Position numbers and translations under genes: made by a program. Positions 1-4,200 of a DNA stretch of 64,000 bases are shown piece by piece. Within the stretch, counting starts at the first letter, position 1; each line of letters begins with the position of its first letter. The stretch is from the IMG/VR virus record IMGVR_UViG_3300048597_000634, positions 124,001 through 188,000 of that record; one strand, given 5' to 3'. The notes under the pieces were generated by a model. It ran no database searches and was not told the origin of the DNA. It was given only the letters and a program-made list of their open reading frames with translations.

Positions 1-374
1 GCAGAGCTTACTATGATGTGGTCTTGTTTGCTGAGGTAAGTTAGGTTTTCTGGGCGATTATCATCAGTAACACCATTGATGTGATGTACTTCGACGACGC
101 CTTCTTCAGCCTTGAAACCATTTGAGAGAGCTTTATACCCACCGCAGGCGTAGAAAGCGACTATTTGGGAGACGCCGACTATTTCACCGTTGTTCGTGGT
201 GTGAAAATCAAAGAAACCTGAGCGGGTTAAGGTGCGAAAGACCGACTTATTATCTGCACGTTTAGCGAAGAGTCTGCCAGACTTTTTGCACTTGATGGTT
301 TTAATGACATTGAGAATGGCGCCTAATCGGAGTTTAGCCCGTTCGGCGCCCATGCTAGCATTCTTATTACTCAT
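1..374 (-). CDS. HNH endonuclease (3' end runs off the window)
   Basis: Not in the ORF track. Manual translation from ATG at 374: MSNKNASMG...EVHHINGVTDDNRPENLTYLSKQDH, a typical HNH motif. Confidence 0.8.
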   Translation of the reverse strand, partial: MSNKNASMGAERAKLRLGAILNVIKTIKCKKSGRLFAKRADNKSVFRTLTRSGFFDFHTTNNGEIVGVSQIVAFYACGGYKALSNGFKAEEGVVEVHHINGVTDDNRPENLTYLSKQDHIIVSS

Positions 375-665
375 AGGCTTAGGGATGAATGGTAGACACA
401 CTGATCCTATCGAACACTCAGATAGAACCACGGTTTAAACATTCAGCCCCTACGGCTTTTTATGCACAGATCTTGGGGTGCGCCGGCCTATCATCCCTTG
501 TCTCTAGGATCAGTTCCGATGCTATCTGTCCCGGCGAATTAAGCCCGTAGGCCTACCCTCTTCCGTATGCTGATTAATGGAAGGTCCCACGCCCGGACAC
601 ATAGGGTTGTGGTATCGACATCCGGCCCATGTCCCCAAGAGGATGGTGTCCGGCTTGCCGATAAA
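375..665 (-). ncRNA. Putative structured RNA/leader upstream of the HNH gene
   Basis: GC-rich intergenic region with helices CCGGACAC/GTGTCCGG (593-600/646-653), CCTACGGCTT/AAGCCCGTAGG (449-458/541-551), CGCCGG/CCGGCG (481-486/531-536), plus six complementary blocks between 374-425 and 486-528. Confidence 0.55.
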
Positions 666-675
666 AATAATCATA

Positions 676-1185
676 TCACAGCTTACCTAATCTTTCTAAA
701 CAATCTCTACAAACGCCGCAATGGCGGCAGTCTACTTTGCTGGATAGTATTTGTAAGTCATTATTAGAGCCGAGGTCAACCGTTACAAGACTACCGGAGA
801 AGCCACGTTCAATCTCTTTATAGCGGGACGCTATAGTTAGTCTTTTATTCTCTATTAAGGCTTTTTTCCTAGCTTCTTTCTGCTCTAGAGACTCTAAGCG
901 TAGTCGAACGCCTTTCGTCGGTAAAGCTATGAGGTTGACAGTGGTTGGGAGAACATGTTTGAGATAGTTAAAAACCTGCGGTATTTCTTTAACACGGAAC
1001 ATATACGCAGATCTGGGGCTTTGTACGAAGCGATAGTTGTTTAAGCCGGGCTCTTTTGCTACCCACTGGCTCCGTTTGTTAATCCAGTCAACTCTAATAT
1101 AGCGGGTAGATACTATGTGTGGTCCTGGTTTGTGCACCTTCTCACGAGGTCGTCGCTCTCTCTTAGGTTTAGTTTTTCTCGCCAT
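676..1185 (-). CDS. Hypothetical basic protein with C-terminal CxxC-x-CxxC
   Basis: 169 aa ORF ending CRHCGVCRDC; coupled to the upstream gene. Confidence 0.6.
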   Translation of the reverse strand: MARKTKPKRERRPREKVHKPGPHIVSTRYIRVDWINKRSQWVAKEPGLNNYRFVQSPRSAYMFRVKEIPQVFNYLKHVLPTTVNLIALPTKGVRLRLESLEQKEARKKALIENKRLTIASRYKEIERGFSGSLVTVDLGSNNDLQILSSKVDCRHCGVCRDCLERLGKL

Positions 1186-1717: not shown

Positions 1718-2563
1718 TTAAACATCCCCTGTGTTAGTAGACGGGAAAGCGCGCCCTGCACCCCATATTATACGTACAGCACCAGCACCACCAGTACCTG
1801 TGTTTGAGTTAGCAACGCCAGCGCCACCACCATAGAATCCTCCATTTCTTACTTCTGCTTGATTAATTCCAGCAATAAGATTCGAACTTTTTCCTCCGTG
1901 CTGTCCCCCACTCCCACCAGATCCTCCATTAATAACTCCTGCAGAATTAGTGCTCCCGTTGTTGGAGCCATTACCTCCTACACCATTTTCTCCTTGTCCT
2001 AATAGTCCTACTCCGCCGCCGCCCGAGCTACCACCACCACCACCGCCAGCGCCACCAAATCCATTACCGCCTAAAATATCAAAATTACTAGAGCCAGTTC
2101 CACCATTTCCGGTGTATCCAGCTGCTCCACCTCCCCCCCCTTGGGCGCTAGCACGGTAATTACCGCCAGTGCCACCACCATCTCCTACTATGATAGTACC
2201 CGGACTTCCACCTGCTGCGCCGCTAGACGCTTCAACCAGCGTAGCTGAATTAGACGCTCTCACGATTTTGACCGTATTCGGACGAATAGTAGAAACACCT
2301 CCGGCACTACAATAAATCTTCAAGGTCTCCCCTGGGGTTACTGGTATATTATTTTTCCAGGCCAACCCTCCACCGCTGCCGCTATAGTATAAACCGCTAT
2401 TACTGTATGAACCACCACCGGCCCCCACGCACACAGCACAAATAGACGTTACATTTGCCGGGACTGTCCAATTTGTTAGTCCGTCAGCAGTGAAAGTCCG
2501 CTGTCCTTGTGGCGTCATTGTTACTCCGCCAGCAAAAAATAAAGATTGACTTATAGGGTCCAT
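1718..2563 (-). CDS. Glycine-rich virion/tail-associated protein
   Basis: WTVP.NVTSI..VCVGAGGG ... GGAGAVRIIWG glycine-rich domain. Confidence 0.7.
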   Translation of the reverse strand: MDPISQSLFFAGGVTMTPQGQRTFTADGLTNWTVPANVTSICAVCVGAGGGSYSNSGLYYSGSGGGLAWKNNIPVTPGETLKIYCSAGGVSTIRPNTVKIVRASNSATLVEASSGAAGGSPGTIIVGDGGGTGGNYRASAQGGGGGAAGYTGNGGTGSSNFDILGGNGFGGAGGGGGGSSGGGGVGLLGQGENGVGGNGSNNGSTNSAGVINGGSGGSGGQHGGKSSNLIAGINQAEVRNGGFYGGGAGVANSNTGTGGAGAVRIIWGAGRAFPSTNTGDV

Positions 2564-2571
2564 ATAGCTTA

Positions 2572-4200
2572 TTAACTATTAAAGTTTACGGATGCAGAGC
2601 CATACCATTTAGTGCCATTATCTCTAGTAACAAAGGTAAAGATATGCACTTTACCCGTCGTCAATACTGGCGCGGTATTGTTAGACCATCTAACGCTGGC
2701 AGGCCAAGTAATCGTCCCACCAGTATGGTTTATCTCTATAGTAAATGAATAAGCGTTGGTGCCAGTGTCAGGGGCAGAAAACGTAAAGGTGGTATTACTA
2801 CTTACCGTCCGAATAAAGTAATTACCTAAGGTCGTCTGGATGTTAGATGCCCCGACTGTGGTTACAGTCCTAGCGTAAGGCTGGGCAATAGCTGCCCCTA
2901 CAAACTCCGTAGTGGCTATTTTAGTAGAACTATCACCGACAGTAGGAGTATTAGCCGTAGGGTTAGTAAGACTAGCACCGCTAAGATTTGCTTTACTAGC
3001 TAGACCATTATTGGCGGTAGTAGCCAGGTCAAAGGCAGTCTTTAGGGCGTTTGCTGTGGCAGCTTGGGTAGTAGAAGTACTGCTCGTCGTGTTGTTGAGT
3101 TGAACTACACCAGCTTGACCAGTAGTAGCACTTTGAATAGTAGCCGGAGTTACGCTAGCTACGTGACCATTAGCATCAAAGGTCATTGACTGGATATAAG
3201 ACAGTCCGGTATTAGAGCTGTTGGTAGCCTTTGGGCTGATAGTGGGGTGTGACGTCAGATAATTAGTTGTATCTAATACCCAAGCACTAGCGCCATTCTT
3301 CCGTAATAACCCGGCGGTACCTGTTAGGTACGAGATATTAGTGAGAATATCATTGGTCGTCTGTTTGGCGTCTAATGCGCTTTGTAGTCCACTGACTGTA
3401 GATATAGCTTGGGTGCCAGTATGGTTGGCTCTAGACCGGTTAGCTGTGTCTCTGGCGTTTAACTGGGTAGTAGTCTCGTAGTCATTAAGAGCGCTGGGTT
3501 GTAACGCTGTAGAGGCTAAAGCACCTTGTGCAGCGGTAGCAAAGTCTTCAATATCAGATAGGGCAGCGGTGCCGAATGCAGGCTTACCGGTGATATCAGT
3601 CCAACCTACGTTAAGAGTTACTTCGCCTAGTTCGTCTAAGTCAATAGCTGCTAACTTTTGTTTTTCTAGTGTGGTGTAGTTTTCTTCAGTAGCAACATAG
3701 TTGGGGTCAATAACTACCCCGGCGTTATACGCCATTACCGAGACACCTATGTCTGCTGCTTTGAGGATAGTGGCGTCGGCGGGCTCTTTGCTATTTACGT
3801 TGTCGGTTAGTTCACCTAGAGCTTGATCTATACCAAATAATGTAGTGCTGAGGTCTGCGATGCTAGATATAGGTTGGGTGCCGGTATGGTTAGCCCGATC
3901 ACGATTAGCTGTGTCTCTGGCGTTTAGTTGGGTCGTCGTCTCGTAGTTGTTAAGGGCGCTCGGTTGTAACGCAGTAGAAGCTAAGGTGCCTTGGGCAGCG
4001 GTAGCAAACTCATTTGAATCAACTAATGCTGCCGTTCCAAATGCAGGTTTATTTGTAATAGTATCCCAGGCTATGGTGATTTCTGTCTGCAACTCACCGA
4101 GCTTTGCTTTCTCTGCGTCAGTATACGCGTTAGTGTCTGGATGGCTTTCGTATAAAGCCTTAATTTGGGCGCTGGTTAGATGACTGACATTGTTGCTCAT
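2572..4200 (-). CDS. Tail fibre protein
   Basis: T/A/S-rich 542 aa; GVVQL...AATANALK and KIATTEFV fibre motifs; internal duplication; C-terminal ITWP..VRW domain. Confidence 0.8.
   Translation of the reverse strand: MSNNVSHLTSAQIKALYESHPDTNAYTDAEKAKLGELQTEITIAWDTITNKPAFGTAALVDSNEFATAAQGTLASTALQPSALNNYETTTQLNARDTANRDRANHTGTQPISSIADLSTTLFGIDQALGELTDNVNSKEPADATILKAADIGVSVMAYNAGVVIDPNYVATEENYTTLEKQKLAAIDLDELGEVTLNVGWTDITGKPAFGTAALSDIEDFATAAQGALASTALQPSALNDYETTTQLNARDTANRSRANHTGTQAISTVSGLQSALDAKQTTNDILTNISYLTGTAGLLRKNGASAWVLDTTNYLTSHPTISPKATNSSNTGLSYIQSMTFDANGHVASVTPATIQSATTGQAGVVQLNNTTSSTSTTQAATANALKTAFDLATTANNGLASKANLSGASLTNPTANTPTVGDSSTKIATTEFVGAAIAQPYARTVTTVGASNIQTTLGNYFIRTVSSNTTFTFSAPDTGTNAYSFTIEINHTGGTITWPASVRWSNNTAPVLTTGKVHIFTFVTRDNGTKWYGSASVNFNS
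3400..4068 (-). repeat. Internal ~68 aa duplication in the tail fibre (about 3400-3603 and 3865-4068)
   Basis: W..IT.KPAFGTAAL....FATAAQG.LASTALQPSALN.YETTTQLNARDTANR.RANHTGTQ occurs twice, 465 nt apart. Confidence 0.9.

What the first reader, a model, noticed from the sequence alone, without database searches (positions are those of the whole stretch)
374..528. Six blocks reverse-complemented in place, in the same order, in the non-coding leader of an HNH gene
Seen (+ strand): TAGGC 374-378 / GCCTA 486-490; AGGGATGA 381-388 / TCATCCCT 491-498; AGACA 394-398 / TGTCT 499-503; ACTGATCCTA 400-409 / TAGGATCAGT 505-514; TCGAAC 410-415 / GTTCCGA 513-519 (one bulge); CAGATAG 419-425 / CTATCTG 522-528. 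A normal hairpin needs the partners in reversed order; here the order is parallel. The second set abuts and fills the loop closed by CGCCGG/CCGGCG, and the first set runs into the HNH start codon. Inference: these pairings probably cannot all form at once. They could be serial pseudoknots or a stepwise switch controlling HNH translation, a guide-like loop, or the footprint of template-jumping synthesis.
Basis: seen in the sequence. Interest (0 to 1): 0.8.

Follow-up and report, generated by a model that had tools for sequence, protein, structure and literature searches.

The report
Structured leader RNA of mobile HNH gene
The odd block-by-block complementarity is really in this phage's DNA and is hard to get by chance, but its closest relative lacks it; what relatives share is a previously undescribed folded RNA leader of about 300 bases that travels with a mobile HNH nuclease gene.

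Summary
The six blocks exist as described: five exact, one bulged. The parallel-order chain scores 35. One of 30,000 dinucleotide shuffles reaches that, and the next best tile in the 64 kb window scores 21-23. The only close homologue, L003 (HNH 79% identical), has no such chain. Its block pairs show nine breaks and no compensatory change, and the CGCCGG/CCGGCG closing stem drops to 3/6 pairs.

What is conserved is a structured non-coding leader (window 375-675, minus strand) of a free-standing HNH_3 endonuclease gene in a T4-like jumbo phage. Its 5' domain is 89% identical between the two phages, although the upstream protein is only 50% identical. Four helices each carry one compensatory change. 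No Rfam family matches.

Every family member examined sits behind 300-680 gene-free bases, with different upstream neighbours.

The block complementarity is therefore specific to this phage. It is either alternative pairings that mask the start region, a footprint of templated mutation, or coincidence. The leader family is the more solid and moderately novel result.

The parts
1..374 (-). 5' part (124 codons) of a free-standing HNH_3 endonuclease gene. The full gene is 224 aa (L002:4001-4672).
   Evidence: Translation. Pfam HNH_3 E=2.7e-8 and 6.9e-8 on the full length. PHROG HNH endonuclease families. No RuvC or other domain.
375..675 (-). Non-coding structured leader between the stop of the 169-aa gene and the HNH start codon.
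   Evidence: No conserved ORF. The substitutions between the window and L003 are not concentrated at third codon positions, and 12 of 17 would change the amino acid in the one open frame. There are four compensatory pairs. No Rfam hit.
613..663 (-). P1: a long hairpin with an 8-bp outer stem (663-656/613-620), a CCGG/CCGG stem (653-650/622-625) and an apical stem-loop.
   Evidence: A-U to G-C compensatory change at 656/620 in L003. Pond-metagenome contigs carry the same G-C pair plus a U-A to U-G change at 661/615. Comparable modules (outer stem, internal loops, inner hairpin) appear in the single-sequence MFE folds of L032, L034, L009 and L015.
448..606 (-). P2: a long-range helix pairing CCCUAUG.GU (606-597) with GC.CGUAGGG (456-448), enclosing the central domain.
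   Evidence: 9/9 pairs in both phages, with a C-G to U-A compensatory change at 606/448.
530..597 (-). P3 (597-590 with 530-536) enclosing the P3a hairpin CUUCC/GGAAG (583-579/560-564).
Evidence: Compensatory C-G to U-A at 595/532 and at 580/563.
484..518 (-). B module: a hairpin with stem AUCCU/GGGAU (510-506/497-493), loop AGAGACAA (505-498) and outer pairs 518-511/484-490.
   Evidence: 10/10 pairs kept in L003 with 3 one-sided changes. In five leaders (window, L003, L032, L034, L036) the core AGACAAG (loop plus first stem G) is invariant and 3 of 5 stem pairs show compensatory changes. Model R2 finds exactly these.
403..429 (-). A hairpin GGUUCUAUC/GAUAGGAUC (429-421/411-403) with a 9-nt loop. 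It contains blocks f', e' and d'.
   Evidence: 9/9 pairs in both phages, with one U-G to U-A change. Present in every predicted fold.
374..425 (+).
   Evidence: Verified. This region is 72% identical to L003.
486..528 (+).
   Evidence: Verified. This region is 69% identical to L003.
348..378 (-). Predicted hairpin pairing the start-codon region (378-369) with codons 6-9 (359-348), which include a second in-frame AUG.
   Evidence: Base-pair probabilities of 0.8-1.0. This is a single-sequence prediction. The L003 partition-function fold shows no such downstream pairing. One gene caller started the protein at that second AUG (P0001, 217 aa).
670..698 (-). Sigma-70-like promoter match (TAGAAA, 17 nt, TATGAT) that would start transcription at the foot of P1.
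   Evidence: A consensus scan only, 9 of 12 matches.
676..1185 (-). Upstream 169-aa gene of unknown function with a conserved C-terminal VDCxxCGxCRDCLER motif.
   Evidence: ORF list. 50% identical to its L003 counterpart. The C-terminal motif is shared with otherwise dissimilar proteins in L015, L032 and L036.

Best explanation
What it is. Window 375-675 (minus strand) is the structured 5' leader RNA of a free-standing, mobile HNH_3 homing-type endonuclease gene in a T4-like jumbo phage. The leader belongs to a previously undescribed family of 300-450-nt or longer leaders that accompany this HNH family.

Its conserved parts are:
- hairpin P1;
- long-range helix P2;
- helices P3 and P3a;
- a hairpin with the invariant loop AGAGACAA (module B);
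- a hairpin about 45 nt before the start codon (module A).

What the blocks are. That complementarity is real but exists only in this phage. Each of the three long blocks pairs a segment that is variable between the two phages (d, b', f) with a segment that is conserved (d', b, f'). The helices cannot all form together. In both phages the two modules fold locally.

How it most likely works (inferred, not shown). The leader keeps translation of the endonuclease low by burying the start region, which has no Shine-Dalgarno sequence. In this phage the cross-pairings offer additional, mutually exclusive ways to mask positions -11 to +2. The main ones are b/b' (8 bp, -11.6 kcal/mol), a/a' (6 bp, covering the AU of the AUG) and d/d' (10 bp, -13.9 kcal/mol). 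They probably arose by templated (template-switch) mutation or by selection in this lineage. They are not a conserved device.
For: Conservation of the leader core:
- The 5' domain is 89% identical between the window and L003. The upstream protein is 50% identical and the HNH protein 79%.
- P1, P2, P3 and P3a each carry one compensatory change, four in total, and none of these pairs is broken.
- A third variant in pond metagenomes keeps P1.
- There is no coding signature.

Family level:
- All 10 distinct leaders examined precede HNH genes of this family and are gene-free for 300-680 nt.
- The AGAGACAA hairpin covaries in 5 leaders.
- The L034 and L036 leaders are 84% identical although their upstream proteins end differently.

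Blocks:
- They are verified and statistically unusual.
- They are absent in L003.
- A fold forced to contain b/b' has -111.7 kcal/mol, against -112.5 for the MFE.
- The start region is predicted mostly paired, with mean unpaired probability 0.12 against 0.41 for the whole RNA.
- L037 has a weaker parallel chain (27, p about 0.014) whose second set covers its Shine-Dalgarno sequence and start codon.

Established knowledge: T4 homing-endonuclease genes are held down by RNA structures that occlude their ribosome-binding sites. Template switching can create in-place reverse-complement copies and RNA hairpins (PMC8794818, PMC5453318, listed; I did not read them in full).
Against: - There is only one close homologue plus partial metagenome contigs, so covariation rests on one or two events per helix.
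- Folding z-scores of the window and L003 leaders are weak (-1.4).
- The fold restricted to the conserved helices is 14 kcal/mol above the MFE.
- In the thermodynamic ensemble the start region is masked by local hairpins, not by module B. Start-region pairing is strong only in the window and L009.
- There are no transcript data. No RNA run was shown to hold the region.
- The direction of change (gain in the window or loss in L003) cannot be set without an outgroup.
- The parallel order itself has no functional rationale in this model.
Confidence: 0.5

Rival explanations
1. Coincidence in a word-poor, highly structured RNA. The leader reuses a small vocabulary of 5-6-mers and their complements. 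With many windows and many pattern types screened, one parallel chain of this strength is expected somewhere.
For: Six 5-mers occur 4-5 times in 315 nt where 0.4-0.9 are expected. Shuffles that keep 4-mers reach a score of 35 about 25 times more often than dinucleotide shuffles (3/4000 against 1/30,000). The pattern is not conserved in L003. The pattern class was defined after seeing the data.
Against: It is still at most 1e-3 per region and is the strongest chain of either orientation in 64 kb. The second-strongest parallel chain among the other family leaders examined (L037) also lies on the start region.
Confidence: 0.27
2. Pure mutational footprint. Several short template-switch (quasi-palindrome) events during replication copied nearby sequence in reverse complement, leaving perfected short inverted repeats with no function.
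For: For the three long blocks, the differences from L003 cluster in one arm while the other arm is nearly unchanged. Block d has 3 changes against 1. Block b' has at least 5 changes plus an indel against 1. Block f has at least 4 changes plus a 5-nt indel against 1. Short seeds such as ACTG/CAGT are shared by both phages. The mechanism is established (PMC8794818, PMC5453318).
Against: No outgroup sets the polarity. The unchanged arms are also the structurally constrained ones, which predicts the same asymmetry without template switching. Known template switches give antiparallel hairpin extension, not five collinear blocks at a constant offset of about 105 nt.
Confidence: 0.15
3. One reading: a conserved serial pseudoknot or stepwise switch in which the blocks pair one after another to control HNH translation.
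For: Three of the helices (f, d, b) have 6-11-nt linkers, so pairwise H-type pseudoknots would be sterically possible (inference). The individual helices are stable.
Against: L003 has 9 broken and 0 compensatory block pairs, a chain score of 11, and a duplex energy at shuffle level. Both partner regions are occupied by conserved local hairpins.
Confidence: 0.04
4. The leader is a scaffold or guide RNA for the HNH protein, an OMEGA-like RNA-guided homing nuclease, with module B as the guide.
For: There is a family-wide association of a small HNH protein with a long structured upstream RNA inside a mobile cassette. This resembles HEARO/IscB in layout.
Against: No Rfam HEARO match. The protein has only an HNH_3 domain. 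The 'guide' would match the cassette's own DNA. Leader-to-flank matches are at chance level in 8 loci. The supposed guide is a conserved hairpin, not a variable segment.
Confidence: 0.04

Closest known systems
Translational occlusion of phage homing-endonuclease genes by mRNA hairpins (T4 I-TevI and free-standing seg/mob genes; from general knowledge)
   Same: A mobile endonuclease gene in a T4-like phage, with its start region predicted to be buried in RNA structure. It has no Shine-Dalgarno sequence, although the neighbouring gene has GAGGAG.
   Different: Here the leader is about 300 nt (up to 450-680 nt in relatives). It has a conserved multi-helix core shared across a protein family, far more than a single occluding hairpin. 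Regulation is inferred, not shown.
HEARO RNA / omegaRNA of IscB (Rfam RF02033)
   Same: A structured RNA of about 300 nt lies immediately upstream of an HNH-containing ORF and moves with it.
   Different: There is no covariance-model match. The protein is a 224-aa HNH_3 protein without RuvC or PLMP domains. There is no variable guide segment matching flanking DNA.
Short-range template-switch (quasi-palindrome) mutations (PMC5453318, PMC8794818)
   Same: They produce in-place reverse-complement copies of nearby sequence. These appear as mutation clusters in one arm that perfect an inverted repeat.
   Different: Five collinear blocks at a constant offset of about 105 nt have not been described as far as I know, and polarity is unresolved here.
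H-type pseudoknots
   Same: Two helices whose strands alternate in the order a, b, a', b'.
   Different: Here there are six alternating pairs with 0-5-nt linkers, which cannot coexist, and none covaries.
Lariat-capping (GIR1) ribozyme upstream of an intron homing-endonuclease ORF
   Same: A structured RNA domain sits directly 5' of an endonuclease ORF.
   Different: GIR1 is eukaryotic and group-I-derived. There is no Rfam match, and no intron context here.

Membership tests
HEARO / IscB omegaRNA | Covariance-model match to RF02033 | tested here: not met
   No hit at E up to 10 on 361, 3000 or 30,492 bases.
HEARO / IscB omegaRNA | The adjacent protein has a split RuvC domain with an inserted HNH (IscB architecture) | tested here: not met
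   Only HNH_3 at residues 94-119 of 224.
Group I intron carrying an endonuclease ORF | Match to the group I intron model, and flanking sequences that form one interrupted gene | tested here: not met
   No Rfam match. The upstream gene ends at its own stop. The downstream gene is a complete endolysin with its own ATG, 3 nt after the HNH stop.
tRNA / tmRNA | ARAGORN detection | tested here: not met
   0 genes in the window.
Conserved RNA switch or serial pseudoknot formed by the six blocks | Block pairs kept, with compensatory changes, in homologues | tested here: not met
   In L003, 25/35 pairs remain, 9 are broken and 0 are compensatory. Its chain score is 11 against 35.
Conserved RNA switch or serial pseudoknot formed by the six blocks | The closing stem CGCCGG/CCGGCG is conserved | tested here: not met
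   3/6 pairs in L003. One arm is used by the covarying helix P3.
Structured cis-acting leader RNA (new motif) | Non-coding, more conserved than its neighbours, with compensatory base-pair changes | tested here: met
   89% identity against about 70% background. Four compensatory pairs between the window and L003, and three more in the AGAGACAA hairpin across five leaders.
Structured cis-acting leader RNA (new motif) | Transcribed as part of the HNH mRNA | not testable with these tools
   No RNA run holds the region. There is only a promoter-like consensus match at 698-670.
Hairpin occlusion of an endonuclease start site (T4 type) | Start codon and upstream region base-paired | tested here: inconclusive
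   Predicted mean unpaired probability is 0.12 in the window and 0.15 in L009, but 0.41-0.60 in the other leaders. This is in silico only.
Template-switch mutation footprint | A mutation cluster in one arm that perfects complementarity to an unchanged arm, polarised by an outgroup | tested here: inconclusive
   The asymmetry is seen for blocks d, b and f. No usable outgroup exists, because L015 is too divergent.
Box C/D K-turn | GA pairs on both strands, conserved | tested here: not met
   There is a weak sR3 hit (15 bits, E 0.1) on the plus strand at 384-406. L003 has CUGC in place of CUGA.
Guide RNA of an RNA-guided nuclease | A variable segment complementary to the target or flank | tested here: not met
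   The longest leader-to-flank matches are mostly 8-9 nt, at chance level, in 8 loci.

The most novel reading that the evidence does not exclude
The 300-450-nt leader is a functional partner of the HNH protein rather than a passive 5' UTR. It could be a ribozyme that processes the mRNA to a leaderless form at the conserved UAAGCCUAUG, or a scaffold RNA that the endonuclease binds for homing or self-immunity. The AGAGACAA hairpin would be its conserved core. In that case the in-place reverse-complement blocks would be a phage-specific self-recognition device between that core and the gene's own start.
Probability: 0.07. Interest if true: 0.85.

Novelty: new variant of a known kind. Interest (0 to 1): 0.42.

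Why it matters
Free-standing homing endonucleases are common in large phages, but how they are kept at harmless expression levels is known for only a few T4 genes. The result here is a protein family that always carries a long, covarying, unannotated RNA leader, including an invariant AGAGACAA hairpin loop. That is a candidate new RNA motif, and a testable handle on endonuclease control or mobility.

The block pattern itself is a caution. A statistically striking complementarity can be specific to one genome and overlie modules that fold differently in relatives.

Tried and rejected
- Known RNA families: six Rfam searches, including permissive ones on the bare leader and on relatives' leaders, found nothing relevant. 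ARAGORN found no tRNA or tmRNA.
- Hammerhead idea: L034 has CUGAUGA...GAAA, but extra bases separate the core from stem II and there is no Rfam hit. Rejected.
- K-turn (C/D-like) reading of module B: rejected because L003 lacks the GA.
- Hidden ORF in the leader: one frame is open in both phages, but the substitutions are not codon-like.
- More homologues: a phage GenBank blastn search found none. Two conserved DNA patterns and two protein queries against IMG/VR found only the window's contig and L003. The metagenome scan gave only relatives at about 30% identity. Model R1 of the 5' domain finds nothing beyond the window and L003.
- Aligning L015's leader with the window's gave no trustworthy homology. 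A MAFFT alignment of P1 across seven leaders was too poor for RNAalifold.
- Guide hypothesis: there are no consistent leader-to-flank matches and no alternative target for L003's module B.
- Simple explanations of the parallel order were considered and do not reproduce the block order: direct repeats of palindromic units, an inverted copy of a hairpin, paralogous hairpins about 105 nt apart, and mirror repeats.

Full report
**Observation**

Reading 1-1500 and checking by script confirms every block. TAGGC/GCCTA, AGGGATGA/TCATCCCT, AGACA/TGTCT, ACTGATCCTA/TAGGATCAGT and CAGATAG/CTATCTG are exact reverse complements at the stated coordinates, in the same left-to-right order. TCGAAC/GTTCCGA needs one bulge. 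The HNH ORF begins at ATG 374-372 on the minus strand and matches Pfam HNH_3. All large ORFs of the window are on the minus strand, so the sense RNA reads 675 down to 375.

I scored chains of exact complementary blocks (at least 5 nt, parallel order, gaps of at most 10 nt).
- The region scores 35.
- Dinucleotide shuffles average 12.7, and 1 of 30,000 reaches 35.
- Shuffles preserving 3-mers give 0/4000, and shuffles preserving 4-mers give 3/4000.
- Tiles of the real window reach at most 21-23 for parallel chains and 27 for ordinary antiparallel chains.

So the pattern is real and is the strongest such chain in 64 kb. Part of the excess comes from a small reused vocabulary: six 5-mers occur 4-5 times in 315 nt.

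**Where it sits**

The window is part of IMG/VR contig 3300048597_000634, about 205-214 kb. Three neighbouring features point to a T4-like jumbo phage, probably of a cyanobacterium:
- tail-fibre and glycine-rich proteins upstream;
- an endolysin immediately after the HNH gene;
- a Kyanoviridae Gp96-like protein beyond that.

The 300 nt between the 169-aa gene (676-1185) and the HNH start have no Rfam match at permissive thresholds and no tRNA or tmRNA.

**The close homologue**

L003 comes from another contig of the same metagenome and has the same gene order. Its HNH protein is 79% identical and its upstream protein is 50% identical. Leader identity varies by segment:

| Segment (window coordinates) | Identity to L003 |
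|---|---|
| 5' domain (663-530) | 89%, the best-conserved stretch locally |
| Module B (529-481) | 69% |
| Middle (480-457), where L003 has a 34-nt AT-rich hairpin insertion | 26% |
| 3' part including module A (456-375) | 72% |

RNAalifold and direct counting give the following helices.

| Helix | Window coordinates | Support |
|---|---|---|
| P1 | 663-613 | A-U to G-C at 656/620 |
| P2, long-range | 606-597 with 456-448 | C-G to U-A at 606/448 |
| P3 | 597-590 with 530-536 | C-G to U-A at 595/532 |
| P3a | 583-579 with 560-564 | C-G to U-A at 580/563 |
| Module B hairpin | 518-484 | 10/10 pairs kept, three one-sided changes |
| Module A hairpin | 429-403 | 9/9 pairs kept |

None of these pairs is broken. 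Short contigs from pond metagenomes carry a third variant that keeps P1. One reading frame is open across the 5' domain in both phages. However, the 17 substitutions fall 5, 8 and 4 on codon positions 1, 2 and 3, and 12 would change the amino acid, so it is not coding.

**The blocks in the homologue**

- L003's best parallel chain is 11, at shuffle level.
- Column by column, the five exact block pairs are 25/35 paired in L003, with nine breaks and no compensatory change.
- The best B-against-A duplex is -36.8 kcal/mol in the window (14/500 shuffles as good) and -22.6 in L003 (381/500).
- The CGCCGG/CCGGCG stem falls to 3/6 pairs, and its arm 531-536 is the 3' strand of the covarying P3.

**The wider family**

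A profile search with six HNH proteins found about 30 relatives. Together with four loci fetched earlier (L009, L010, L011, L015/L016), I fetched L032/L033, L034/L035, L036 and L037. In every case the HNH gene follows a gene-free stretch of 300-680 nt.

- Upstream genes differ. Five of them share only a C-terminal VDCxxCGxCRxCLxR motif.
- The L034 and L036 leaders are 84% identical although their upstream proteins end differently. The leader therefore travels with the HNH gene.
- Several modules recur. One is a P1-like hairpin with an outer stem of different sequence in each leader (MFE folds).
- The other is a hairpin with loop AGAGACAA. The core AGACAAG is invariant in five leaders, and 3 of its 5 stem pairs show compensatory changes. 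The stems are AUCCU/GGGAU, UCUC/GGGA, CGACC/GGUCG, CUAUC/GGUAG and UCUAUC/GAUAGA. Model R2 recovers exactly these.

So the "loop" of the finding is a conserved, self-folding module lying 119-167 nt before the start codon.

**What the blocks can and cannot do**

The second set is contiguous and the order is parallel. Two neighbouring helices would therefore need linkers of 0-5 nt to span a whole helix, so they cannot coexist (inference). Only f, d and b, with 6-11-nt linkers, could combine pairwise as pseudoknots.

| Quantity | Energy (kcal/mol) |
|---|---|
| Helix a | -6.6 |
| Helix b | -11.6 |
| Helix c | -3.7 |
| Helix d | -13.9 |
| Helix f | -7.0 |
| Unconstrained MFE | -112.5 |
| Fold forced to contain b/b' | -111.7 |
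| Fold forced to contain d/d' | -103.2 |
| Fold restricted to the conserved helices | -98.4 |

In the ensemble the start region is strongly paired, with mean unpaired probability 0.12. The partners are local: 391-380 with 440-452, and 378-369 with 359-348. Module B is not among them. The gene has no Shine-Dalgarno sequence, although its neighbour has GAGGAG.

One other leader, L037, has a weaker parallel chain (27, p about 0.014) whose second set covers its Shine-Dalgarno sequence and start codon. This is suggestive but not significant after ten tests.

**Origin**

Comparing the window with L003, the three long blocks each pair a variable arm with a nearly unchanged arm:
- d has 3 changes, against 1 in d';
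- b' has at least 5 changes plus an indel, against 1 in b;
- f has at least 4 changes plus a 5-nt indel, against 1 in f'.

That is the signature expected of template-switch mutations (PMC5453318, PMC8794818). It is equally expected if the unchanged arms are simply the constrained ones. No outgroup is close enough to decide.

**Alternatives tested**

- There is no guide-like match between leaders and flanking DNA in eight loci.
- L003's module B has no alternative target.
- A CUGAUGA...GAAA string in L034 is not a hammerhead.
- A weak C/D-box-like hit on the plus strand is not conserved.

**Verdict**

The solid finding is a new, family-wide structured leader of a mobile HNH gene. The in-place reverse-complement blocks are specific to this phage. 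Most likely they are alternative start-masking pairings or templated-mutation residue (combined about 0.5-0.65), with coincidence a serious rival (about 0.27).

Noticed in passing
loci L003, L009, L010, L011, L015, L032, L034, L036, L037 (upstream of each HNH gene): Every member of this HNH_3 family that was fetched sits behind a gene-free stretch of 300-680 nt. Several stretches share motifs: a P1-like hairpin, GYGYGRCC..CUUCC, and the AGAGACAA hairpin. This looks like an undescribed RNA family tied to a mobile endonuclease.
   Followed up: partly
window 676-740 (-); L015:890-956; L032:1985-2049; L036:2050-2119: The upstream proteins are otherwise dissimilar (50% identity or none) but end in the same VDCxxCGxCRDCLER motif just before the leader. 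This may be the homing site, or a co-converted flank of the cassette.
   Followed up: partly
L037:2377-2510: A second, weaker example of five in-place reverse-complement blocks in parallel order: TAATC, ATATAA, TCTCCT, TAGTT, GCTCT against GATTA, TTATAT, AGGAGA, AACTA, AGAGC. The offset is about 90 nt. The second set covers the Shine-Dalgarno sequence and the start codon. Score 27, reached by 86/6000 shuffles.
   Followed up: partly
L011:3893-3975: In this distant relative the AGAGACAAG motif with flanking arms lies on the strand opposite to the HNH gene (model R2, E 0.27). A GC-rich terminator-like hairpin with a T run follows, 40 nt before the HNH start. If real, the orientation of the module is not fixed.
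   Followed up: no
L003:3862-3905 (equivalent to window ~470): L003 has a 34-nt AT-rich perfect hairpin inserted in the least conserved part of the leader.
   Followed up: no
window 348-378 (-): The start codon is predicted to pair with a segment containing a second in-frame AUG (codon 8). One gene caller started the protein there (217 aa against 224 aa).
   Followed up: partly
window 596-606 and 372-381 (-): CCUAUG occurs twice in the sense RNA, once in the 5' strand of P2 and once at the start codon. Both copies are complementary to CGUAGG (455-450) and all three are conserved in L003. This is a possible conserved two-state pairing (P2 versus start-codon masking).
   Followed up: partly
L003:3785-3795 and L003:4799-4809; window leader ~537-547: An 11-nt identity (GGGCTCAATTC) links L003's leader and the endolysin gene 120 nt after the HNH stop. 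It is 10/11 in the window's phage. L036 has a 12-nt identity between the 3' arm of its AGAGACAA hairpin and a downstream gene. This is a slight excess over chance.
   Followed up: no
window 562-836 and 1079-1294: Pond-metagenome runs of one study hold short contigs of a third, related phage variant. Two of these contigs, one in each of two runs, end at window position 562. That may mark a polymorphic point just before module B.
   Followed up: no
window 384-406 (+): There is a weak match (15 bits, E 0.1) to the 3' half of an archaeal C/D-box sRNA model: GAUGA, 12 nt, CUGA. The same words occur in the sense strand of module B, and they are not conserved in L003.
   Followed up: yes
window 1718-4200 (-): A 281-aa glycine-rich protein (Pfam Gly_rich_2) and a 542-aa tail-fibre-repeat protein with an internal duplication lie upstream. 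Together with the downstream endolysin and the Kyanoviridae Gp96-like protein, they place the locus at the end of a tail-fibre module.
   Followed up: no
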